Below, in pieces: positions 45,666-60,430 of a stretch of 64,000 bases of DNA (positions within the stretch are counted from its first letter, which is position 1; the number at the start of each line of letters is the position of its first letter). The translations under genes and the position numbers were made by a program. Under the pieces are notes generated by a model. That model made no database searches. It had not been told where the DNA came from and saw only the letters and a list, made by a program, of their open reading frames with translations. Source of the DNA: Asterias rubens (taxonomy: Eukaryota); NCBI RefSeq assembly GCF_902459465.1, contig NC_047072.1, positions 16,988,001 to 17,052,000 on the forward strand, given 5' to 3'.

Positions 45666-47483
45666 TCAGATGCTTAGGCCGAAGACACTGACGATGCAGT
45701 ACATTGTCTTGTTCTCCCATCTGACGGTGCAGCTTCCATCGGTCATGTTATCCCAGAAACAGGAGCTCGCTGTGTGGAGACCAGCGCCGTTCTTCTGCAT
45801 GATGACACAGGTGACTGTGAACACAAGAGAAGAGGAAATATCTAAGCCGTTAGATAGAGTATGCCACAATTTAGGCCTTGAATTTACCCAAGGGCACCCA
45901 TAGCCATGGCGTGTGCTTTTGCTGTGGTGCCCTTTACAAAGTTCCTAATTAAACTTACATTTTCCCCATAGAAGAGCCCCTTACCAGAGGGAAATTGATG
46001 TGACGCTTCAAGAGTGAAGTTTAAGGCCTGTTTTTATATCGGTGTAGCGCATAATGCAGGATCAGGAGCCTCTAGTGCAACACATAACATACAACACTGA
46101 AATGATTTACATAAAGCTACAGTTACAAAAATAAAGATTCAAACAAGTTGTTCTCTAAAAGTCCCTTGAAAGAATCTAAAGAGAGTCAGCTTGGGGAATG
46201 ACGAGGTAAGTCGTTCCATATTCCATTGAGTCAGTAGGGATTGGCCAGAGAGGAAGGGCAGTGCTAGGCCAACATGAGCAGCTGAACATGAGGGATAAAT
46301 TGGCCTACTTGCGTACACAGACAACGCAACTTTCTAATTGCAAAAAAAGAGGACATTTTGTCCAGTGTTTTCTATGGCACTGTTTTGAAAAGAAAAAGAG
46401 GAAATCAGCTAATCAACTGAAAAGTTGCATGTGGTGTATGAAATATTAAAGAAACTTTCTTGTTCTTACCAATATATTTGAAGGGTTTGCCCAGTTTTGT
46501 CAGCTGATTGAGGCATTGTTCAACGACGTTGGATGTCCACTGATTGATTTTGTTGTGTTGGTATGCGTTGCCTCCTATCGTCCCTTCAACAGCTTCTTTG
46601 ATGATGTTGCTGACTTCATCAACCACGAACGAAGTCTGAAATTAAGAGATACATTGTTTTACTTCATAACATTAACACTTCAATCCCATCTATGATCTAA
46701 TTGAACTTTGAAGGTGAAAAAAGTGTACTTTTGGTACCTGACAATAAATCATGACAATAATTTAAAATAAACTATTGTCTTGTCTTTACTGCACAAACCG
46801 CCACCACTGGGCTATAACCGTACAGACCCTCATGCATGCATGCTCCCTACTCAAACTTTATATTAACAAGGAGGGACTTAAAATTATTAGCGTCAGGGGC
46901 TGATTTAACTTGCCTAAACACAACTTATGCTTACTTAGTTAGGGATATTTTTTTATTTTTTGTTAAATTCATGCTGTTGTTTTGAGTGTGTTGATCAACT
47001 CACTCACTGTCATATATATATAAGTGTCCAACTAACTCGCTGTGCTGTGTAGTCGAGCACATACAAAGGAAATGATTATTTTGTGCATCTTTTTTGGGAT
47101 AACTTTCCGTATACTATGGCGCCACCACTTTTTCACTCATTTTTACAAAAAGGGATATATCAATCAGGTAAATTAGATACTATATTATTTTATTTCGAAT
47201 GAAAAAGTGGTGGCGCCATACTGAAACTTTTCCCTTTTTTGACACAGGCGTGATATGTGCCACCTTTTTATTGTGAAATATGCACAACTTTTTCGAACAG
47301 AGTCTGCCACTGGCTGTGTCACTCTGTCTGCGTTGTGAAGCCGGAATCATCCGGTCCCATCAAAATTAATTGACTCGATGACCAAGTCGACTTTTTAAAA
47401 TTTGACGCATATAACAACAATTAAGAAACTGAAAACAATCCTGTGTAATACTTTACCTCTTCTGCTGTCTGATATTCTTCCAT
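45666..47483 (-). CDS. DYNLT1: Dynein light chain Tctex-type 1, 3 exons, 113 aa
   Basis: Exons 47483-47457 (MEEYQTAEE), 46635-46470 ([41 protein letters not shown]), 45814-45666 ([49 protein letters not shown]). Total 342 nt, canonical splice sites. Confidence 0.97.
47103..47232. mobile_element. Short MITE (TATGGCGCCACCACT termini), DYNLT1 intron 1
   Basis: Near-identical inverted copy at about 59732-59852 in SLC16-like intron 1. Confidence 0.75.
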
Positions 47484-48130: not shown

Positions 48131-49714
48131 GTGCATATTTTTTTGTAAGCAGGGATTCATAAAAAAAGGCTCATACAAAAAGTGGGTTTTCGACTATCGG
48201 TTTGGGGAAAAGTAAAAAAATCACCTGTTACAAAAAATAAAAATTCCCATAGAGAAAAATGATAAGATATCATGTTGTCGCAGATTATTGTTTTTCGAGA
48301 CAACAAGTAAACAGGTTGTACAACAAAGTCATACATTGGGACGAGAAAAAAAAAATTTCAGATAGAAATGAAAGTAGGCCTACCACAGCCATCTGTTTAC
48401 GTGCGAAAAGTTACAGAGAGGTTAGTTTGAGGGTAAACATTTGGACCCAATCATGAGGCAAGTGTAGGGAAAACTGAAACATGAGCTAAAATATTTGACG
48501 TGAAGGTGTTTTGTTAAAGTTTTTATTTTGAAGAGCAAAACCACACTAATGTGCCCCCTTTTTCATCAGACTGAGTTTGCAAGTATAGGGTGAGTTGATG
48601 TTTTCTTCCAAATGGATGACACTGTTTGTGCCTGCAGGAAGTCCATGATCAAAAGGAGGCGCGGCGTCATCATTCTGAGTGAGGGACTCTGGTTTTGATC
48701 CAGTGTTGAAACATTATTTTGATACATCATATCTTGTCCAGTAATTCGTGTTGCGATAATGGAAGACTTTGTATGGCAGCATATACTTCAGGTATAACTT
48801 CATTGTTTACATAATTCTGTGGTAAATACTTGACTACCGTTTTTATTTTATTTTTTACATACATTGAAACATCTTGAGTTTGGGCTTTTTGTTGCATCTT
48901 CTGTAAGAGCGTCTTAACCTTTAGGGAATAGGCACTTGATATAAATGCTGATATAATGTAAGTCTGCTGCCACCTAGCGTTGGCGACTATACTTTGCCCC
49001 TAAAAATGAACGTTCGAGACTAACAAAATGAGTGCGTGGAATAAATTCCACCTGTTGGTTACAAACAACATGAGCGATTATCAACGTCATCAGTTCAAAA
49101 TGAACAACACATGATTGGGAAGAACAAAGTCTACTAAAAGACAATACAATAATTATTAAAAGTGTTGTCTGGGGATGGGGGTCCCAATCTAAACCAGATT
49201 AATTGAGTCTTATCAGTATAACCTGAAGTATATAAGAATGTTGAAAACAGTCATTTTTAGCCCATCTCAACAAAGATACAAGAGGTAAGTTTTGTCTTTA
49301 GAAGTTAAAAATGGTATGTTAAAGGCAGGGTTTACTTTTGAATTGTCAAAGTATCCTCACTGATGTAGTGTATCCCAAAATGCCTAAAAAATAACAGTCA
49401 AGTTAATGATAAAGTTGCAGTTGGTTTTTAATGAATACAAGAAAAAGTTCAATAATGCCTGAGAAAGGTTTTATTTTATGCCTTCAACTTTTCTAAGAAT
49501 AATGTTTTTGGTGAGAAATAATTATCACTTTCTCACTTCTAAGTGTGCCGTCTCTAACAATGTTTTGTAACATCTCAATACCTCGATCTAGTGCTCTTAA
49601 TCAAAACATTGTGTCGTAAAAGAAAATTATGTGATGTTCTGAAACAAATTTAAAGTTGATTTTAATACAACTAAAGTGTTTTATTTGAAAGCCTCCCAAC
49701 TCCGACCGACCACC

Positions 49715-52700
49715 ATGAAGCTCCTCATTCTGTGCCTGTTTTTGGCCGTAGCTTACGGCGGACTAGCCCCACTCCATCTCGCCAAGACGCGGGGCGTTCC
49801 CAATAGATATATCGTAAAGATAAAGGTAAACCCATTATTTGAGAATATTCTTATAAAATGCATATTACATGTATTATGACATAGAGGCTTGAGCATCGGC
49901 TCTGAAAAGAGCAAGTTTGGTATCGACTCGAATAGTATATTCACTGCTCGTATTCTTAATATGGAAGCTAGCTAGCTTTGGCCAATGTGGCTTGGACAAC
50001 ATTGAATGCGTGTCAATTAAATTAAATGAATGTTTGCTGAAATTGGCCGGGAAAACCTACAATATGCATCCAGTGTATAGTTTCAATTCAGAGAAGCTTT
50101 TAAAACTTTCAGTTTGTTTTCAGGATGCATCGTTGCTGGATCAAGTAGAGAGTGAAATATTGAGCAAATTCAATACAATGCGAACGCCGGCTCCGAAAAT
50201 GACGAAGATTCGAGAATTGCTACCTCTTCTTACATTGCGTATTCCTCCACACCTTGTGAATTATGTAAGTTTAAGAGTAAACCTTTTATGTCTTGCTTTA
50301 ATGACGATTATTATTAAAACCCTTCAAAATCTATGCATATATACGCTTACACAATCGTTCTGTTTCGAACAGCACGTCTTAGATCATGTACTTCGGGAGA
50401 GGGGGGGGGGTGAGGGTGAACAGAGTCCTTTTCAAAATGGTCTGAACCATCCGCTACCCGAAACCGTAGGAGTGGCCAATAGTTTCTGCGACTTTCGTCG
50501 ATTTGTGTAGTCAAAGAATCAACCCAGGACAGTTTGAAGGTTTCCATGCTACTTTGACGACATGTCTCCATAATAATATGGAACATGGAATAATTGTCGA
50601 GCTGTATAAAATGAACTGTGTTTTACATGTGACATATTTGGTATAGGTACGTTCCATTGATGGTGTGGAGTACATTGAGCAAGACGGCGTCGGTGAACTC
50701 CTGACGAAATATTGGGCCCCATCTTGGGGGATCGACCGGATTGATCAACGCTCCGGAACAGACGGAACCTTCACGATCAATATAAATAGTAAGTCAGGAC
50801 ATTGCCGCTAACACTGGAGGTGTTCAAATCTAAATTGGAAACCAGTCACCTCGCCCCCGCAAGGTCACCCACTGCAAAGTCGCCCCAGCAAAGCCGCCCA
50901 CTACAAAGTCGCGCCCTCACTTACAAAGTTGCCCCTGTTTCAAAGTCGCCCCTCACAAAGTCGCCCCCTTACAGAGTCGCCCACAACTAAGTCCCCTCCC
51001 CCCTCCCCTCGACAGTTGCCCCCCCCCCCCTATAACAAAGTCATCCATTATTATGGATAGCCAAGAAGAGGGAATCAAAGTAAACATCATGGTGGTAAAA
51101 TAGCAACAGTGTAAACGCGTTGGCATAAAAGCAAGTGTTGTTTTAAAAACTTAATATAAATGTTATTGTTGGTATCTATATGAGATGTGAGTCTTGACAG
51201 CATGTCTATCAAGTAGGTTAGCAGTTTTTTGCAGTGCATATTTTAGGCCCTCTTGTGTTTGTTTTGTTTATCTAAACAAAGCCTGAAGAAACAAAACAAA
51301 CACCCTTGAGTTTCTAGAAAGAAGTTACCCAACATTATTTATTTTTGAATAAAATACTTCAAGTTGCATTTACAGTTTTTGGTCGATGTTGTTGTTGTTG
51401 TTTATGTTGTTGTAACGTTGTTGTTGTTGTTGTCACACTCCAGATCCAGGCAAGGGGGTGAAAATCTATGCAGTTGGCACCGGTCTCCAGATAACCCACT
51501 CCGTATTCACTCATCGGGCCAGGCTACTGTACGGAAAGAGCGATGCCTCCGGTCACGGAACCCACTGTGCAGGCATTGCTGGTGGGGCGACTTACGGCGT
51601 AGCTCGAGACGCTCTGCTGAGAAGTGTACGGATTTGCGACTCGGTTGGACAATGTTACATTTCAAGACTCTTTGAAGGTATTATCTTAACGGGGTTGAAT
51701 ACTTTTTTTCAGCACAGAAAAAACACTATCCCAAAAATTTACGTTAAACTTACACGGTTTGAAGATAATAATAGTAGAGAGCTTTCCCAAGATATGGCCG
51801 AGGTGTTTTCCTTTACTTGAAAATGTCAAGTGGTTACTACTTTCCCGTATAAATGAAAGGAAGTTAAGCTTTTACTGGAAAGTTTTTACTAATACTAAAT
51901 GTATCTACTTTTAGATGCTAGCACGTTCTTTAACTTCCATATGAATAAAACGAAGAAAGTACCACCAAATGCAAGTAAGTAATACTGGTTATATTGCAAA
52001 GTAACCCCAGACATGTGTTGACATTCTTAAACACTGTTTTTTACACACTGTTCCTTTCTTCACTTAATTGCTGTCTGTCAGGTTTGGACGCTGTGAGCAA
52101 AGACGGTTCGCTGGTAACCAACAAGGGAGTTGTAATGATACCACTAGCCTTCGGCTCGTCATCGTCCATCAACACCATTGTACAAAAGTTATGGGATGAA
52201 GGTTTCGTAGTTACCACCGCAGCTGGTAATGCATTCTCAAGTGCTTGTGATACATCACCACAATCTCTTTCAGATGTAAGTATTATTATAGACTGGTCCC
52301 CTGTTCTTACTTGGTACACCACACGGTATTCAGCACTCCATTGCCTTCCGCGTTATTATGTGTCCCTGGTTCCCCTCTACGCTTTACTCAGTGACTATAT
52401 AGGGTGCGTTCGTTTAGCTTCCCTGGGTCGACCCCGGTCTGTCCCGCGGTGCGTTCGAATAGCTTTGACGTCATTCCATGGGCTCACCCCGGTCTGCCCC
52501 TATAGTGCCCTGCTTGTGGAGTGGGTCACTTGGGGGCTGCCCCCAGGTAAACGACGTCACTACGAGAGCGGTGAGTGGTCGTTCGTTAAGCTCTTGTCAG
52601 GGGCTCACCCGAGTGAGCACCGCGGGGTCGACCCAGGGAAGCTAAACGAACACACCCAGTATGCGTCCCTGGTTCCCCTCTGCGCTTTCAGTGACATTAT

Positions 52701-53766
52701 AGGTGCGTTCGATTAGCTTCCACGGGTGAGTCCCTGACAAGAGCTAAACGAACGATCACTCTCGTCCACCGCTCTCGTAGTGACGTCATGCACCTCAGGC
52801 CAGCCCCCCTTGTGATCCACTCCACAAGCAGGACACAGGGGGCTGACCCGGGTTGAGCCCCTGGAATTACGTCAAAGCTATTCGAACGTACCGGGGGCAG
52901 ATCGGGGTCGACCCGGGGAAGCTAATCGAACGCACCAATAGGTAGTTAACCATTGCGCACACTCAAACTTGCTCCTTGAGGTGCAAACAAACTGCAAGAA
53001 CTTATGTATTGAAATTGACGATATTGGTGTTGACACAATGAGAGACAAATCAAAATTAATATCATTACTAAAATTCATATTTTTGTTCAAGATAATTACA
53101 GTTGCCGGGACGGATAAAGACGACAGACGTTTAAGTTATTCAAGCTACGGTTCGTGTGTTGACATCTTTGCTCCTTGCAAGGATATTCTAAGTGCTACAT
53201 TTAGTTCTTCAAGCAACAGTGCTACAGCGACTGCGTCTGGGACGTCTTTTGCGTGCGCACACATGGCAGGTAGGTTTAAAAGCACTGGCCACTAAAAAAA
53301 CAACTCAAAATAATTATTAGCATACGAACTTTGGTAACGAGCAATGGATAACTGTTGATAGTATAAAAAACATTATGAGAAACAGTTCCCTCTAAAATAG
53401 TGTACTGATGAGACCAACGTTTTGATTGTATCCATATTATTTGTATCCCTTTTTTGCAGGAGCTGCTGCTATGTATTTGGGTGAAAATACAGGATCTTCG
53501 CCTTCTGATGTGAAGAATGCCTTTTTAGATAATGCCACTAAAGACGTTGTCTTAGACCCGCACGGTAGCCCCAACAAACTTCTTTATGTCAACGTAAGTT
53601 TTGTGAAAAATCAACAACTTTGTAAGCATTTTCTTAAGTTTGTTCCTATGTTAAGATTTATAAACACAAAAATGCTAAATTATTTTCCATTATTGTGTAA
53701 ACAAAATAATCAACACACTTTTACTTGATTTATTGATGTTTGTTTGTATTACAGTTTATTAATTAA
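49715..53766 (+). CDS. Proteinase K/aqualysin-type subtilase (S8A) with signal peptide and I9 prodomain; catalytic Asp replaced by Gly
   Basis: Exons 49715-49825, 50124-50264, 50647-50788, 51444-51677, 52082-52275, 53092-53269, 53460-53593 and probably 53755-53766 (1146 nt, about 381 aa). Motifs MKLLILCLFLAVAYG, RYIVKIK, VEYIEQDG, WGIDRIDQR, GHGTHCAG, AAGN, YGSCVDIFAP, SGTSFACAHMAG, GSPNKLLY. The last mini-exon is less certain. Confidence 0.93.
50850..51000. repeat. Degenerate CAAAGTCGCCCC minisatellite in subtilase intron 3
   Basis: About 8 imperfect copies with variable spacing. Confidence 0.7.
51386..51432. repeat. (GTT)n microsatellite at the subtilase exon 4 acceptor
   Basis: Interrupted GTT run ending about 10 nt before the AG at 51442-51443. 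Confidence 0.85.
52403..52935. mobile_element. Two oppositely oriented GGTGCGTTCG-terminal MITEs in subtilase intron 5
   Basis: Copy A about 52403-52658 and copy B about 52703-52935 are diverged reverse complements. Each is preceded by a related segment of about 43 bp ending in TATA. Confidence 0.8.
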
Positions 53767-54969
53767 TGCGTCATAGTGGAGTACAAGTCAACCTTAAGCA
53801 CCCCTCGTCAGAAGTGGAATAATCTGAAATCAACCCCGGATAATGACGTCATTGGATACGCTCATAAGAAAATCACTGACATATAAAAGTTACCTTTTTC
53901 TCTATGAGACTAGAATGACTTAAACTGAGAAAATACAAAATGGTGAAAAATTACTGCAAAAGCAATTGATAAAACGGACGAGGGGAGAGATGAAGGGGGG
54001 AGGGCTGGTAGGGGGAGGGTGAGGGGACTGGGTCAAACTATGAACAAACGTAATCTACATGAATCAAATACAAGTTCTGTGTTCAGCACTATAGTTGAAC
54101 ATTATATTGCAGTATTACAACACTATTGAAGTATTAATAAAGAAAAGAGAGAAACTGTGGTGTTGCTTTTCGGAGGCGTCACTCATTGAGTGTAGAGTAC
54201 GATAGTGTAACAACTCATATAGTTGGATGATTGTTGTATTCCGCCCTTCGCGGATATTAATGGTGTGGGTTACAAGACTGGAAGATATACCACGCGGCAA
54301 AAAAAATGAATGTCCACACAGTGACAGGTTGACACAGTTTCATCAACTGAAAAGACTCATGTCTTCGGTCATATTTGTGCTGGATTCTGCAGTGATTACG
54401 GACCGGGGGAAATACCTGAATTCGTCAACGATGCCGAAGCCGTAGCAAACGCTTCTAGATTCGGACATCTTCAGTTAGTGTTCATTAGTGATAGCTCCCT
54501 CATCGGACGGAGTGGTTCAATCAGCAAGTAACGTCTTGTATCAAGTCTGGATATTATTATTACGTCTACTGCTCGGTAACTTACGGGTCACTATTTCATT
54601 TGAAAACAATCGTAAAGGTATAGAAACTAGGTGAATAATTTAGTTCCGATGTAGCCTGAACATCTGACGTCACACTTCGAAGCTCGTGAGTTGCGCCCGA
54701 GTGGCATCAAGCCTAGGTCAACCATCGTCCATCTTCACCTTTCACCTACATGTATATGCAGACGACCCGCAAGTGCAGCTGCCAAACGTCGCCTCGGACC
54801 AATCAAAACACAGGTATAGAAAGCTTACGTCACTGCGCGTTTATCCAATGAAATAATAAGTATCCAATGAAGTCGCTGGTTCTGAAAAGCAAGTAGGGCC
54901 TACCTGTCTTTTTCCTTGATAATAAAGACAGGGTATACCAGTCTAGTTCCGATTATACTTCTAGGTAGG

Positions 54970-57900
54970 TTATAGCTCACACACTACGGTGTCATATTGC
55001 ACTTGGTTGGTTGTAACTTGAATGTTTGAGTGTCTTTCTTGTCGACGTTTCGTGAGTGCTATCACAAAGGTCAGCAGGAACGCAACGAGGAACATAGCAC
55101 CCCCTGCCAGGAATGGCACCACATAGTTTCCCGTAGCATCGTAAATTCTCCCTGTGAAATATTGAAAATGAAAATGGTTTTGTTAGCGTTGATGTGATGA
55201 TGCTCAAAATCCACGGTTTGGCACTAGCTTTGGGTTTGGCACTTGCTTTGGGTTTGGCACTAGCTTTGGGTTTGGCACTAGCTTTGGGTTTGGGTTAGCA
55301 AAGGCAGTGGACACTATTGGTAATTGTCAAAGACTAGCCTTCACAGTTGGTGTATCTCAACATATGCATAAAATAACAAACCTGTGAAAATTTGAGCTTA
55401 CTCGGTCATCGAACTTGCGATATAACAATGAAAGAAAAAAACACCCTTGTCACACGAAGTTGTGTGTGTTTACATGGTTGATTTCGAGACCTCAAGTTCT
55501 AAATCTGAGGTCTCGAAATCAAATTCGTGGAAAATTACGTCTTTCTCTAAAACTATGGCACTTCAGAGGGAGCTGTTTCTCACAATGTTTTATACCATCA
55601 ACCTCTTCCCCATTACTCGCCACCAAGTAAGGTTTTATGCCAATAATTATTTTGAGTAATTACCAATAGTGTCCACTGCCTTTAAAATGTTTCACGAGAT
55701 TTTGCCTAACATTCAGTGCCAAGGACAGCCATTATGGTGAGGGGTATTGGGGCCTACACTTTGGGATCATGAGACAATGTTCGATGTGGTGTCAAAAGTG
55801 TATATTGCCTGAAGTTGGCTGCCTCCTGCTCCACCTGGGCACAATTTCATAGCGCTGTTAAGTATAAAAGTTTGCTTAGCATGAAATTTCTTCCTTGATA
55901 AAAACAGGATTACCAACCAAATTTTCATTTGTTGCATATTGCTTGTTGCTGGTATTTAGCTGTTTTTTGTTTATCCTGAAAATCACGTGGAAATTTTGAT
56001 GGTAATCTTGTTTTTATCAAGGAAGAAATGTCATGCTAAGCAAATTTTTGTGCTTAGCAGCTCTATAATTGGGCCCTTGGATTCAGAGAGCTAGTTGACC
56101 ACACATGGTGGGGCAGCTATAGTTGCCTCCAAATTGCCAGTACAAGTTGCCTCGAGTGACAAGGCCTTTTAAACTTACTGGATTCAGTGAACCATAAAGA
56201 CGCTTAGATAAACGATCAAAATCATCTCCTAAAGCCATTGGACCCTTTCGGTAAACAGTATTGTCCAAGGCCCACACTTTGTGTACCACAACCTCTATAT
56301 CAAATAACAAACCCTGTGAAAATTTTGTCTCAATCGGTCATCGGAGTCGGGAGAAAATAACGGGAAAATCCACTCTTGTTTCCGCGCGTTCCGCACTTAT
56401 CTTATGTCACAGGTTTTCTGACTAATTTTGTTGTGTCTGATTTTCTTTGTGTTGTGTTTTGTTTTGTTTTTGTTTTGTTTTTGGTTTTACTGCGCCTTGA
56501 ACACCCAGCAGGGTGGATATGTGCGCATTACAAGGTTTGTTATTATTATTTATTATTATTATGTCATGACGTGTGTTTAGAATAAATCCGTAATTCTCGC
56601 TATCGAGAATTGATATTGTTTTAATGTTTTCTCAATAAGTAAAGAATTTCATGGAACAATATTTCAAGAGAAGTCTTTCACCATTACCTTCTGTAAACCC
56701 TGTAAATTATTTGTAACTCTGTGAACTTTTTTCTTTCTTTCTGTACCGAAAGTGTATAATGGCTTTAAGAATAATATTTCAAGAGAAGTCTTTCACCAGT
56801 GCCTTCTGTAAACCCTGTAAGTTATTTGTAAATCTGTGATTATTTTTTTTCTGAACCGAAAGGGTCCAATGGCTTTAAAAAGATTGAGAGAACATTATAT
56901 TTACCTGCAACTACTGATCCGATCCCGTTGAATATAAACGCCGTCGCCCAGATCAGACTCAGTGCAACCGGCACATGTGAAGGATCCACCAATTTCCTCA
57001 TATTAGTAACAAAGAGAGGACTAGCAACCCCAGTAAACGCTCCGTACACCACCACGTATCCGACCAAGAATACATAACTATCAGAGACCGGGTTCAATGC
57101 AGTTGTAACTGCACTCCCGAGTAGAGTAACGAGATGAAGTTTGTAGCAACTTATGTAGTCCCTGTCGACGAACCAACCGTGTCCTAGCCTAGTCACCATG
57201 GAAACGATAGCATAAACAAAGAGGAGCATGCTGCTATGGTAGTCAGACCATCCCGCATCCTTGGCGCGTGCTGGTAGATGAGAGAGGTTGATAAATAAAC
57301 CAATTGAATATGCGCAGCATGCTAGTAATAACAATACAGCATGGATGTTTGTGAAGACGCATAAGAATCTCAGTGATGGTGGTAGGATGCTGTCTTCTCC
57401 ACCAGACGTCTTAACATCACTGTTTGCTTTGTTGGTTTTCATCTTCATCGCCCTAGTCTTGAGAGGACGAAAGAGGGCGCAAGCAGCGACGCCATTTAAC
57501 TGCAGTGCCCCTGTGACGAACATAGCACTCCTCCAACCGTAGTTGTCAATCAGGATGCGAAACAGGGGTGGAAAGACCATCTGTCCATTACTAATTCCCA
57601 AGAAAGCTATGCCATTTGCGAGTGCATATCTTTTGTTGAAGTACTGAGCAAGTATAACAGATCCAGGAGTCAACATCATAACGACACCAAAACCTAGAAA
57701 CCGGGAAGAATATTATTCAAACAATTAGCTGTTAGGTGAGGTTTGCGGTACGACCATGTGTTAAAGCCATTTGACCCTTTCGGTAAACAGTATTGTCCAA
57801 GGCCCACACTTCGTGTATTACAACTTATATATAAAATAACAAACCTGTGAAAATTTGGGCTTAATCGGTCATCGGAGTCGGGAGAAAATAACAGGAAAAC

Positions 57901-60430
57901 CCACCCTTGTATCCGCACGTTTCGCCGTTTCATGACATGTGTTTAAAACAAATCCGTAATTCTCGTTAACGAGAATTGATATTGTTTTACTGTTTTCTCA
58001 AAAAGTAAAACATTTCATGGAATAATATTTCAAGAGAAGTATTTCACCAGTACCTTCTGTAAACCCTGTAAGTTATGTGTAAATTAAAGGGTCCAATGGC
58101 TTTAACCTAATTTTTGTGGGTAGTGTCGGCTCTAAAAGAACCGGTGGTTAACTCTTTCTTGATTGGGTAATAGTATAATAGTGATTTGGTTCGCTTCTCT
58201 AAAAGGTGTCATTGGCTTCACAACCAAATGATATGAAATGAAACCCTTTGAAAAGAGGGACCATTTAATACGACTTACTAGTCTTGATTTTATGTTAAAT
58301 CTACCCTGGCCCTAATAGAGCATTTATCATGAATCAACTTACCAGACAAGGCGTTACACATGTACAACTGCCACATGTCTTTAGTAAGCGAGCCGAGTAT
58401 AGTTGCGGACCCGTTGATTAAAGCTCCAGTCACGGCGACTCGTCTGATGCCAATACGAGACGCAATAACACCAATGAAAACACCTGCCAAAAATGTTGAA
58501 CAAAAATGAATTTCGAAACAGAAACTGGTCCGTCCTTTATAAATTTTACTTGGGAAAGATGAGGCCACCCATACTTCGGCTAAACAAAAAAACAATCCGA
58601 CAGAATTTCATCCCAATGAACTACAAGCAGCTAACACAAGGAAGGAATTGATGTATCACTTCAAAATCTAACTGATTGTTGTGTTTCTTAAAAACCATCC
58701 GATCGCAAACTTTGCAGCCAGCAGACCGAAAACAAAACTTGGTACTCGTTCATTTTCCGCAAAAGCAGGTGAAACCCTTTAAATTCGATTAATTGAAATG
58801 ACCTATGACCCTTAATAGGCAGTTTGACTCATGGACTCTGAATCTCCACTTTAGAAAACACTTCAGCCCCCAAAAATACTGCAGCCGTTTACAGTGTAAT
58901 GCAATTAAATTAAAATAGAATAAAATACACACATAATAGTATTTATTTATTTATTTTATTTTATTTTTTTATATTTTTTGTTGGGGGGGGGGTCAAACTG
59001 TCTCTTTAACATCTGAAAAAGTTATTAGCTTTGCAACAAAACATGAAATCAACATTACACACGTTTCCCGACGGTCTCTACTGGCTGCAGTAACCAAGGT
59101 ATTCGTGTAAATCTGACAGGGGCGGGGCATCGCAGGGTAAAACGAGGGTTGTTCGGGTATCAACTGTACCAAAGGCGCCGAATATAATTGACACAAACAA
59201 TAATACATGTATGTTTATAGAACAACACAAAATGCAGGAAAAATTAGGTGCATTTTTTCTTATTTCAATGTTTTTCGTATCACATACATAGACATCCAGA
59301 TCTGATTTGTTATCATCATGCAAACAAAACTTTGTTAAGCTGCTATCAGACGTTAATACAAGGTCTTTAAGTTATTTATAGCTGGCTTTCTGATACTGGT
59401 AGACTTGATCCACGTCCCGTTCTCACGCGAGAGGTTCCTAATCATCCGCCGTCACAATGCAGCTATTGTGATGGTCCCGCGACACAGCCCAGGTTGGGGG
59501 ATTAAATAAAAGGACTTGAGTCAAGTCTAAATACCGGGACCGTCGCGATGGCCCGTGTGACCTACACGTCACTGGAATTGTTCGGTGGGTTTATTGTACA
59601 GGCTGAAAGAGAACCCCGTCATACAAGCTGCTAGTGTAGTGTGACAGCTCACTTATTGGCACAAAAGTCTCACACGGGCGGCTAGTCATTGCGACATTAT
59701 TGTTGAACATTTTATTTAGAATTTTGGAAAAGTTTCCGTATGGCGCCACCACTTTTTCATTCGAAATAAAAAAATATAGTATCTAATTTACCTGATTGAT
59801 ATATCCCTTTTTGTAAAAATGAGTGAACAAGTGGTGGCGCCATACGGAAAGTTATCCAGAATGGTATTAGTTAGGCCGTAAGTGTTTGATTACAACCATC
59901 AATGGGTGACACATAATAATGTAATTGGACTACACAACTAATGTTTTTAAACCCCTCTCTCGAGTAATACCCACGTTTCTCAGAATGCAATTCACCACAG
60001 GGCAGCTGCAGTACTTTTTATCAACAATTAGTGTTTATAATTATAATGGTCATTGACATTAATTGGATCGTAATGCAAAGAGCAACTTTGCCGATGAGGA
60101 AACCAACTGTACAATGTATGCTACAGGGCCGGCGAAGCACTTTGGTAGCACATGAATAATTTTTTTAACAATTATGTCTTTCGATCCCCAGTAACAATGT
60201 GTACAAATAATGTGAATGGCTTCTCTCCTGTACTTACAAAATGGACTTGCAACCATCCATGGCATACTGAGCATCCAACTTGTGGCTGTTGCAGTTGAAT
60301 CATAATATTCCTTCCACTCAATGTAGAAGATACCTAACGTTGTTAGATATCCATAACCGAGCATGTTACCAAAGTGGGTACCGATCAGGACCATCCATGC
60401 CCAGCCGTGATCCGGAGCTCTAACACCCAT
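54970..60430 (-). CDS. Monocarboxylate-transporter-like (SLC16 family) MFS transporter, 4 exons, 434 aa
   Basis: Exons 60430-60238, 58483-58343, 57693-56905, 55151-54970 (1305 nt, phases consistent). SLC16-type N-terminus PDHGWAWMV; YFNKRYALANGIA; YGWRSAMFV..LQLN..C.ALFRP; GRIYDATGNY. The specific paralogue cannot be assigned. Confidence 0.93.
55215..55286. repeat. 18-bp minisatellite x4
   Basis: GGTTTGGCACTAGCTTTG repeated directly before a MITE. Confidence 0.9.
55302..55681 (+). mobile_element. Kolobok-like MITE, SLC16-like gene intron 3
   Basis: Family TIRs, right-hand TTAA. Confidence 0.85.
55838..56075. mobile_element. Harbinger-like palindromic MITE
   Basis: GGGCACAATTTCATAG..TTTGCTTAGCATGAAATTTCTTCCTTGATAAAAACAGGATTACC mirrored by GGTAATCTTG..CATGCTAAGCAAA..AATTGGGCCC. 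Fragment at about 2030-2160. Confidence 0.7.
56233..56874 (+). mobile_element. Kolobok-like MITE, third subfamily (AGCCATTGGACCC termini), with a duplicated right end
   Basis: 56233-56764 plus a repeated terminal segment 56766-56874 ending GGGTCCAATGGCT-TTAA. Confidence 0.8.
57765..58101 (+). mobile_element. Kolobok-like MITE, third subfamily
   Basis: TTAA-AGCCATTTGACCCTTTCGG ... GGGTCCAATGGCT-TTAA; similar to 56233-56764 and to the partial copy at about 17510-17790. Confidence 0.8.

What the first reader, a model, noticed from the sequence alone, without database searches (positions are those of the whole stretch)
49715..53766. Intact subtilase gene lacking its catalytic Asp: candidate secreted pseudoprotease
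Seen: the S8 Asp motif, normally V(I/L)DTG, reads IYAVGTG (GGC at 51476-51478). His (GHGTHCAG), oxyanion Asn (AAGN) and Ser (GTS, TCT at 53245-53247) remain. Other conserved positions are also changed: the S1 strand N(M/L)SLG reads MIPLAF, FAPG reads FAPC, and GTSMxxP reads GTSFACA. Yet the signal peptide, I9 prodomain, reading frame and all splice sites are intact. Known: the Asp-His-Ser triad is required for subtilase catalysis and prodomain autocleavage, and the proteinase-K-type subtilase PCSK9 acts on receptors non-catalytically. Inference: this may be a catalytically dead or strongly impaired binding/decoy protein that stays attached to its prodomain, or a recently relaxed paralogue.
Basis: partly seen in the sequence, partly recalled or inferred. 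Interest (0 to 1): 0.75.

Follow-up and report, generated by a model that had tools for sequence, protein, structure and literature searches.

The report
Conserved starfish subtilase lacking catalytic Asp
The common starfish has an intact gene for a secreted proteinase-K-like protein whose catalytic aspartate is a glycine; its sister species has the same change, and the gene is as strongly conserved as its active relatives, so it is most likely a working "dead enzyme", not a decaying copy.

Summary
Window 49715-53766 (+) in Asterias rubens carries an 8-exon, 381-aa ORF. It has a signal peptide, a prodomain and an S8 (proteinase-K-type) domain. All 7 introns are GT..AG.

Codon 143 (GGC, 51476-78) is Gly where proteinase K and 203 of 204 homologues have Asp. 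His169, Asn259 and Ser326 remain.

- **Not an artefact.** Contigs from two DNA runs show no other letter. The independent A. amurensis genome has the same Gly at the syntenic locus.
- **Not decaying.** The two orthologues differ by 31 synonymous and 8 replacement changes. dN/dS is 0.077 (P about 6e-13 against neutrality). There are no coding indels, against 792 gap columns in the introns, and all splice sites are kept. Two catalytically intact paralogue pairs both give 0.081.
- **Changes cluster at the active site.** Of 57 near-invariant family columns, 8 are changed, all in active-site motifs.

Best reading: a secreted, selectively maintained pseudoprotease, or at least a severely impaired one, with a remodelled cleft. 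The "recently relaxed paralogue" alternative is rejected.

Not shown: expression, because the RNA-labelled runs held only unspliced low-depth pieces. Also not shown: lack of activity, prodomain fate and binding partner. I found no paper describing it. It is a new member of a known kind.

The parts
49715..49825 (+). Exon 1: start codon, signal peptide (MKLLILCLFLAVAYG) and start of the prodomain
   Evidence: The N-terminus is collinear with asteroid paralogues. The A. rubens record starts its gene at the same ATG.
50124..50264 (+). Exon 2: core of the I9-like prodomain (47 codons)
   Evidence: There are 0 differences in 141 nt against A. amurensis.
50647..50788 (+). Exon 3: end of the prodomain, the pro/mature junction (GELLTKYWAPSWGIDRID) and start of the catalytic domain
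51444..51677 (+). Exon 4: Asp-motif strand (IYAVGTG) and His motif (GHGTHCAG)
   Evidence: Pfam PF00082. Proteinase K match, E 4.8e-12. 14 synonymous and 0 replacement differences against A. amurensis.
51476..51478 (+). Codon 143, GGC = Gly at the catalytic Asp position
   Evidence: X1 and X3 contigs show no other letter listed here. The A. amurensis orthologue also has GGC.
51554..51556 (+). Codon 169, CAC = catalytic His, retained
52082..52275 (+). Exon 5: altered substrate-binding strand (VVMIPLAFG; S228M, S230P, G232A) and oxyanion motif AAGN (Asn259, AAT at 52228-30)
53092..53269 (+). Exon 6: FAPC (G303C, TGC at 53176-78) and Ser motif SGTSFACAHM (Ser326 TCT at 53245-47; M327F, P330A, V332M)
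   Evidence: Pfam PF00082. 5 synonymous and 0 replacement differences against A. amurensis.
53460..53593 (+). Exon 7: C-terminal helix region ending in GSPNKLLYVN
53755..53766 (+). Inferred 12-nt last exon (FIN plus TAA stop). The alternative is read-through of the exon-7 donor.
   Evidence: Donor, acceptor and all 12 nt are identical in A. amurensis. The read-through tails differ between species, 45 aa against 11 aa. No RNA evidence.

Best explanation
This is a functional Asterias gene for a secreted, proteinase-K-type subtilase homologue. It lost the catalytic Asp (D143G) before A. rubens and A. amurensis diverged. Since then it has been kept by purifying selection as strong as that on its active paralogues.

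**Shown:**
- an intact 381-aa ORF in both species;
- the same Gly in both species;
- dN/dS of about 0.08;
- fold-defining conserved residues all kept, with the 8 changed near-invariant residues all lying in the Asp motif, the substrate-binding strand, the APG motif and the residues flanking the Ser.

**Inferred from established subtilase enzymology:**
- Without the Asp, the charge relay is broken. Replacing Asp32 in subtilisin BPN' lowers kcat by about four orders of magnitude (recalled, not checked here).
- The protein should therefore not work as a normal protease.
- It should not cut off its own prodomain efficiently.

**Proposed mechanism.** It most likely acts through binding, using the subtilase fold and a remodelled cleft. 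It would exist as an uncleaved proprotein, or as one cut in trans by active paralogues. It could act as a regulator or decoy for the expanded family of active starfish subtilases, or for their inhibitors or substrates.
For: - **Asp position is Gly.** Searches show Gly at the Asp column, against Asp in 203 of 204 homologues.
- **Independent DNA support.** Contigs of X1 (50967-51766, 0 differences) and X3 (51255-51773, 1 synonymous difference) agree with the window.
- **Species and synteny.** Searches identify the window as A. rubens. They show the syntenic A. amurensis gene between the same MCT13-like and Tctex-1 neighbours.
- **Orthologue intact.** Searches show all 8 exons, 0 coding gap columns against 792 in introns, and all 14 splice sites kept. 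The Gly, VVMIPLAFG, FAPC and SGTSFACAH are all shared.
- **Selection.** One search gives Sd 31, Nd 8, dS 0.121, dN 0.0093 and omega 0.077 (bootstrap 0.026-0.157, P 6e-13).
- **Per exon.** One search shows exon 4, which holds the Gly and His motifs, has 14 synonymous and 0 replacement changes.
- **Controls.** One search gives omega 0.081 for both intact paralogue pairs.
- **Where the changes lie.** Searches show 5 unique changes at columns invariant in 39 homologues, where every other sequence has 0-1. All 8 changed columns among 57 near-invariant ones lie in active-site motifs. Fisher P is 0.005 with the unchanged His and Asn motifs counted as active site.
- **No obvious rescue.** One search finds no lineage-specific acidic residue near the motif, and finds an extra Cys (C303).
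- **Neutral drift unlikely.** In the simulation, a neutrally drifting copy stays intact with probability of about 2e-4 per lineage.
Against: - **No expression evidence.** The two RNA-labelled runs held only low-depth pieces that run into introns, and no exon-exon joint was listed.
- **Short public models.** Public gene models are shorter than mine: 294 aa in A. rubens and 309 aa in A. amurensis. The A. rubens model's range starts at the start codon and ends at a stop codon. That is, it shows no UTRs, which may mean little transcript support.
- **Possible residual chemistry.** His, Ser and the oxyanion Asn are all retained, so some activity cannot be excluded.
- **Narrow comparison.** dN/dS comes from only two closely related species.
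Confidence: 0.7

Rival explanations
1. It is still an enzyme. Either a Ser-His dyad with the oxyanion Asn gives low but biologically useful hydrolytic activity, or an acidic group is supplied by another residue, the prodomain or a partner. Selection would then be preserving catalysis with a changed specificity.
For: - His169, Asn259 and Ser326, and the motifs GHGTHC, AAGN and SGTS, all survive a stem branch of 0.64 changes per site.
- Exons 4 and 6, which carry them, have no replacement changes between the two species.
- From general knowledge, Asp32 mutants of subtilisin keep measurable residual activity.
Against: - No window-specific acidic residue lies near the motif in sequence.
- The substrate-binding strand is altered (S228M, S230P, G232A).
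- G303C and the residues flanking the Ser (M327F, P330A, V332M) are also changed at positions invariant in 39 homologues. This looks like loss of constraint on the catalytic cleft.
- The retained motifs also have structural roles.
Confidence: 0.2
2. It is a recently relaxed or decaying paralogue, an unprocessed pseudogene that has not yet acquired a disabling mutation.
For: - There is a long stem branch and several hits at otherwise invariant positions.
- No spliced RNA was seen.
- Public gene models are truncated.
Against: - omega is 0.077, with P 6e-13 against neutrality, equal to intact paralogues at 0.081.
- There are no coding indels, against 792 intron gap columns, and all splice sites are kept in both species.
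- The chance of staying intact under neutral drift is about 2e-4 per lineage.
- Root-to-tip length is within the range of the paralogues.
Confidence: 0.04
3. The Gly is an assembly error or a rare allele of one individual.
For: None found.
Against: - GGC is present in contigs of two runs under different organism labels, with no alternative letter listed.
- GGC is also present in an independent genome assembly of another species, flanked by three synonymous differences.
Confidence: 0.01

Closest known systems
Asteroid 'aqualysin-1-like / proteinase T-like' S8A paralogues (e.g. P0154 Patiria miniata, P0153/P0155 Asterias amurensis, P0157-P0163 Acanthaster planci)
   Same: - Same family and architecture: signal peptide, prodomain and proteinase-K-type catalytic domain, about 375 aa.
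- 47-51% identity over the full length.
- Same asteroid-specific clade, supported 100/100.
- Same cysteine pattern.
   Different: - They all keep Asp-His-Asn-Ser and the motifs VVSMSLGG, FAPG and SGTSMACPHV.
- This gene alone has Gly143 plus 7 further changes at near-invariant positions.
- P0153, P0155 and P0156 share one A. amurensis chromosome, and a second S8 gene lies next to the A. rubens copy of P0155's gene. This gene is a singleton on another chromosome.
Proteinase K / aqualysin-1 (PDB 1ic6, 4dzt)
   Same: Closest solved structures by sequence. Exon 4 alone gives E 4.8e-12 and 9.5e-12. The motif order and oxyanion Asn are the same.
   Different: They are active enzymes with Asp39 in VIDTG. 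Here that residue is Gly, and the substrate-binding strand is altered.
CspC and CspA pseudoproteases of Clostridioides difficile
   Same: They are subtilisin-family proteins with incomplete triads that are nevertheless required. They act as sensors or regulators of an active paralogue, CspB (PMC7200643). This is the best precedent for a selectively maintained S8 pseudoprotease that works alongside active relatives.
   Different: They are bacterial spore proteins of a different S8 subgroup, with different residues lost and no secretion signal. Homology to this gene is only at family level.
PCSK9
   Same: An animal proteinase-K-type subtilase whose physiological action is binding, with its prodomain retained. 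There is a weak sequence match around the His motif (E 2e-4).
   Different: PCSK9 keeps a full triad, must autocleave to be secreted and has a C-terminal Cys/His-rich domain (general knowledge). This protein lacks the Asp and ends just after the catalytic domain.

Membership tests
Peptidase family S8, subfamily S8A (proteinase K type) | Sequence homology to the subtilase catalytic domain | tested here: met
   PF00082 on exon 4 (23.0 bits, cut-off 21.8) and exon 6 (31.9 bits). Proteinase K E 4.8e-12. 47-51% full-length identity to echinoderm S8A proteins.
Peptidase family S8, subfamily S8A (proteinase K type) | Catalytic Asp in the D(T/S)G motif | tested here: not met
   Gly143 (GGC at 51476-78). 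203 of 204 homologues have Asp.
Peptidase family S8, subfamily S8A (proteinase K type) | Catalytic His, catalytic Ser and oxyanion Asn | tested here: met
   His169, Ser326 and Asn259 align with the family columns.
Peptidase family S8, subfamily S8A (proteinase K type) | N-terminal I9-type propeptide | tested here: inconclusive
   No Pfam hit on the prodomain exons searched singly. Relatives P0165 and P0167 carry PF05922, and the N-terminal region aligns collinearly with them.
Peptidase family S8, subfamily S8A (proteinase K type) | Proteolytic activity and autoprocessing | not testable with these tools
   Needs recombinant protein.
Pseudoprotease (non-peptidase homologue kept by selection) | At least one essential catalytic residue missing | tested here: met
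   D143G.
Pseudoprotease (non-peptidase homologue kept by selection) | Conserved across species under purifying selection, with an intact ORF | tested here: met
   omega 0.077, P 6e-13. No coding indels and all splice sites kept in A. rubens and A. amurensis. Controls give 0.081.
Pseudoprotease (non-peptidase homologue kept by selection) | Expressed as RNA and protein | tested here: inconclusive
   Only unspliced, low-depth contigs in the two RNA-labelled runs, and no exon-exon joints listed.
Pseudoprotease (non-peptidase homologue kept by selection) | Lack of catalytic activity shown | not testable with these tools
   Inferred only from the missing Asp and the altered cleft residues.
PCSK9-like non-catalytic convertase | Intact triad used once for autocleavage | tested here: not met
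   Asp is absent.
PCSK9-like non-catalytic convertase | C-terminal Cys/His-rich domain | tested here: not met
   The protein ends 3 residues after LLYVN, as its paralogues do.

The most novel reading that the evidence does not exclude
The Asp-less protein is a dedicated partner of the active starfish subtilases, a secreted counterpart of the CspC/CspA-CspB arrangement. It might be an uncleavable proprotein that regulates, escorts or decoys active paralogues or their inhibitors. Alternatively, its triad might be completed in trans by an acidic group from a partner or from its own prodomain. The extra cleft cysteine (C303) might give a covalent link.
Probability: 0.15. Interest if true: 0.7.

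Novelty: new member of a known kind. Interest (0 to 1): 0.5.

Why it matters
Pseudoenzymes are common but rarely backed by evidence of function. Here a single missing catalytic residue comes with a clean evolutionary test.

- The constraint on this gene equals that on its active paralogues.
- Changes are confined to the catalytic cleft.

This makes it a well-founded candidate for a secreted animal subtilase-fold protein with a non-catalytic role. It sits inside a large, unstudied echinoderm expansion of proteinase-K-like genes. My literature searches found no paper on that expansion or on this gene.

The work also shows that the public gene models for this locus (294 and 309 aa) miss parts of a 381-aa ORF conserved in both species.

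Tried and rejected
- **Protein search with the exon-4 ORF.** No candidates scored, so no exon-sized orthologue fragments are in the collection.
- **Metagenome scan with exon 4.** It returned only distant relatives, at most 68% identity over short segments on metagenome contigs, and no orthologue of this gene.
- **Representative search with exon 4.** It found family members at no more than 58% identity, but not the gene itself.
- **Full-length search with P0008.** It did not list the window's own annotated product or its A. amurensis orthologue. I reached that orthologue only through synteny, via the MCT13-like neighbour.
- **RNA evidence.** The single read-laying run showed only unspliced pieces. 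Depth rises downstream of the gene, which may belong to the neighbouring MCT13-like gene's 3' end on the other strand. I could not repeat the call.
- **Patiria synteny.** The PAN/F5_F8C and MCT neighbours are conserved, but there is no S8 gene or remnant there. The gene is therefore absent at that position in a valvatid starfish.
- **AU test.** A clade joining this gene with the intact Asterias paralogues is not rejected (p 0.07), so the gene's origin within asteroids stays open.
- **Structure prediction and fold search: not run.** The spliced 381-aa protein has no reference, and I did not type it.
- **Pfam on single prodomain exons.** No hit.
- **Literature searches.** They found nothing on echinoderm proteinase-K-like genes and no open paper on Asp32 subtilisin mutants. 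Those statements rest on general knowledge.
Full report
**1. What is there**

Reading window 49400-54100 and assembling the exons gives a + strand gene of eight exons. They are 49715-49825, 50124-50264, 50647-50788, 51444-51677, 52082-52275, 53092-53269, 53460-53593 and 53755-53766. Every intron is GT..AG. The CDS is 1146 nt and encodes 381 residues with no internal stop. A tblastn of the model against the whole window finds no second copy.

Pfam finds Peptidase_S8 on exons 4 and 6. Exon 4 alone matches proteinase K at E 4.8e-12. In that alignment, IYAVGTG lies on VYVIDTG, so the catalytic Asp is Gly143 here (GGC at 51476-78).

**2. Organism and family**

I checked this. The neighbouring ORF at 56840-57679 (-) is 100% identical to Asterias rubens 'monocarboxylate transporter 13-like' XP_033635514.1. 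That protein lies on the 18.07-Mb record LR699102.1.

The gene belongs to a large echinoderm and hemichordate expansion of proteinase-K-type S8 genes. Databases label these 'aqualysin-1-like' or 'proteinase T-like'. Its best relatives, from Patiria, A. amurensis and Acanthaster, are only 47-51% identical.

In a maximum-likelihood tree the gene sits inside an asteroid-specific clade (100/100). It lies on a stem of 0.64-0.66 changes per site. Its root-to-tip length falls within the range of its paralogues, roughly 0.4-0.9.

**3. How unusual is the Gly?**

Of 204 homologues of 300-700 aa, 203 have Asp at this column. The exception is a misaligned repeat protein. The other sequences that deviate at triad positions are truncated or mis-modelled.

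Against 39 full-length ambulacrarian homologues, this gene has 5 unique changes at otherwise invariant columns: D143G, S228M, G303C, M327F and V332M. Every other sequence has 0 or 1.

Of 57 near-invariant columns, 8 are changed. All 8 lie in the Asp motif, the substrate-binding strand, the APG motif or beside the Ser. None of the columns outside active-site motifs is changed. Fisher P is 7.6e-5 with motif windows chosen after seeing the data. It is 0.005 when the unchanged His and Asn motifs are also counted as active site.

No lineage-specific acidic residue lies near the motif in the sequence. G303C adds a seventh cysteine to the mature part, where most asteroid paralogues have six.

**4. 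Is it an artefact?**

No. Logan contigs of run X1 cover 50967-51766 with no differences. Contigs of X3, which carries a different organism label, cover 51255-51773 with one synonymous difference (51517 G>A).

The independent A. amurensis assembly has GGC at the same codon. Three synonymous differences lie within the seven surrounding codons.

**5. Is it decaying?**

No. I found the orthologue by synteny. In both Asterias species the S8 gene lies between the MCT13-like gene and a Tctex-1 gene. Mapping the model onto the A. amurensis locus recovers the following:

- all eight exons;
- 0 gap columns in 1146 coding nt, against 792 gap columns in the introns;
- all 14 splice dinucleotides;
- an open 381-aa frame;
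- the same Gly143, VVMIPLAFG, FAPC and SGTSFACAH.

Exons differ at 3.4% of sites and introns at 7.8%. There are 8 amino-acid differences.

Nei-Gojobori counts are Sd 31 and Nd 8. This gives dS 0.121, dN 0.0093 and omega 0.077. The bootstrap interval is 0.026-0.157, and the binomial P against neutrality is 6e-13. Exon 4, which holds the Gly and the His motif, has 14 synonymous and 0 replacement changes. Exon 6, which holds the Ser motif, has 5 and 0.

As controls I compared two catalytically intact paralogues between the same two species. P0208/P0209 over 376 codons gives omega 0.081. P0155/P0169 over 298 codons also gives 0.081.

A simple simulation of neutral drift at half the observed dS used an assumed indel-to-substitution ratio of 0.1. 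It leaves the ORF and splice sites intact in about 2 of 10,000 trials per lineage.

The loss of Asp therefore predates the species split. The protein has been under ordinary purifying selection since then.

**6. Expression**

Expression is not shown. The two runs labelled as probable RNA hold only low-depth pieces that run into introns.

- X19 is identical in sequence to the window.
- X20 carries the 52251 T>G change, which matches the D266E difference of A. amurensis.
- No exon-exon joint was listed for either run.
- Depth in X19 rises downstream of the gene, towards the 3' end of the MCT13-like gene on the other strand.

The public records call shorter products.

- **A. rubens, 294 aa (window 49715-53295).** The length fits exon 2 being skipped and the exon-6 donor being read through.
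- **A. amurensis, 309 aa.** By its coordinates in L082, this model starts inside my intron 2. It ends 36 nt past exon 7, which matches the 11-aa read-through tail plus stop seen.

Because selection acts on the protein sequence across all exons, the 381-aa product is the better model. The last 12-nt exon remains an inference. It is identical in both species, while the read-through tails differ (45 aa against 11 aa).

**7. Mechanism**

- **Established knowledge, recalled and not checked here.** The Asp orients and polarises the His in subtilases. Replacing Asp32 in subtilisin BPN' lowers kcat by about four orders of magnitude. Asp32 mutants of pro-subtilisin do not mature on their own.
- **Inference.** This protein is secreted as a proprotein that cannot efficiently remove its prodomain and is not a normal protease. 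Its cleft has been remodelled, while the fold-determining residues stayed fixed. It is therefore kept for a role that uses the fold, most plausibly binding.
- **Precedent.** The closest example of an S8 pseudoprotease working with an active paralogue is CspC/CspA with CspB in C. difficile (PMC7200643).
- **Main rival.** Residual or complemented catalysis cannot be excluded. His, Ser and Asn are retained, and I could make no structural model.

**8. Comparison with the known, and novelty**

By homology the gene is a member of S8A, but it fails that family's defining Asp. It meets the two testable criteria for a maintained pseudoprotease. It is not PCSK9-like in architecture or in triad.

I found no paper on echinoderm proteinase-K-like genes or on this protein. 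I rate it a new member of a known kind, of moderate interest.

The syntenic region in Patiria keeps the neighbouring genes but has no S8 gene there. The gene may therefore be specific to the Asterias side of the asteroid tree. Dating the loss needs other forcipulatid genomes.

Noticed in passing
window 50124-50788 (exons 2 and 3): A. rubens and A. amurensis show no synonymous difference across 94 codons (about 66 synonymous sites), where about 8 would be expected at the gene's dS. Intron 2, between these exons, differs at 8.5%. Exon 4 has dS 0.28. This may reflect nucleotide-level constraint on the prodomain exons, uneven coalescence, or chance (P about 3e-4 by Poisson).
   Followed up: partly
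window 52397-52940 (intron 5): Two adjacent copies of a foldback, MITE-like element of about 250 nt, at 52397-52662 and 52698-52940. Their terminal inverted repeats begin GGTGCGTTCG. The element is extremely abundant in all four runs, with summed contig depth of 1e4-1e6.
   Followed up: partly
window 50851-50982 and 51387-51433 (intron 3): A degenerate 15-16-nt tandem array (CAAAGTCGCCCC...) and a (TGT)15 microsatellite that ends 10 nt before the exon-4 acceptor. Other high-copy repeats lie in intron 4 (about 51614-51915) and intron 6 (about 53275-53425).
   Followed up: no
window 49715-53295; L082:15402-19260: The public gene models for this locus are 294 aa (A. rubens) and 309 aa (A. amurensis). 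Both are shorter than the 381-aa ORF conserved in both species. The A. rubens range has no UTRs.
   Followed up: partly
window 54970-60430 (-) and 45666-47483 (-): The neighbours are an MCT13-like MFS transporter (XP_033635514.1; last coding exon 56840-57679) and a Tctex-1 family gene. PAN/F5_F8_type_C genes lie beyond the transporter. The PAN/F5_F8C and MCT block is syntenic in Patiria miniata, where two MCT genes are followed by a 299-aa gene with no Pfam domain and then FOXO, with no S8 gene.
   Followed up: partly
P0166 (Patiria miniata aqualysin-1-like): This paralogue keeps the triad but has several unusual residues in conserved motifs: SGSSMACAH, VSVVAGN and VVSMAL. It may be another family member with an altered active site.
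   Followed up: no
window 53416-54000: An RNA-labelled run (X19) holds unspliced contigs whose depth rises downstream of the S8 stop codon. These may be a longer 3' UTR of the antisense MCT13-like gene that overlaps the last S8 exons.
   Followed up: no
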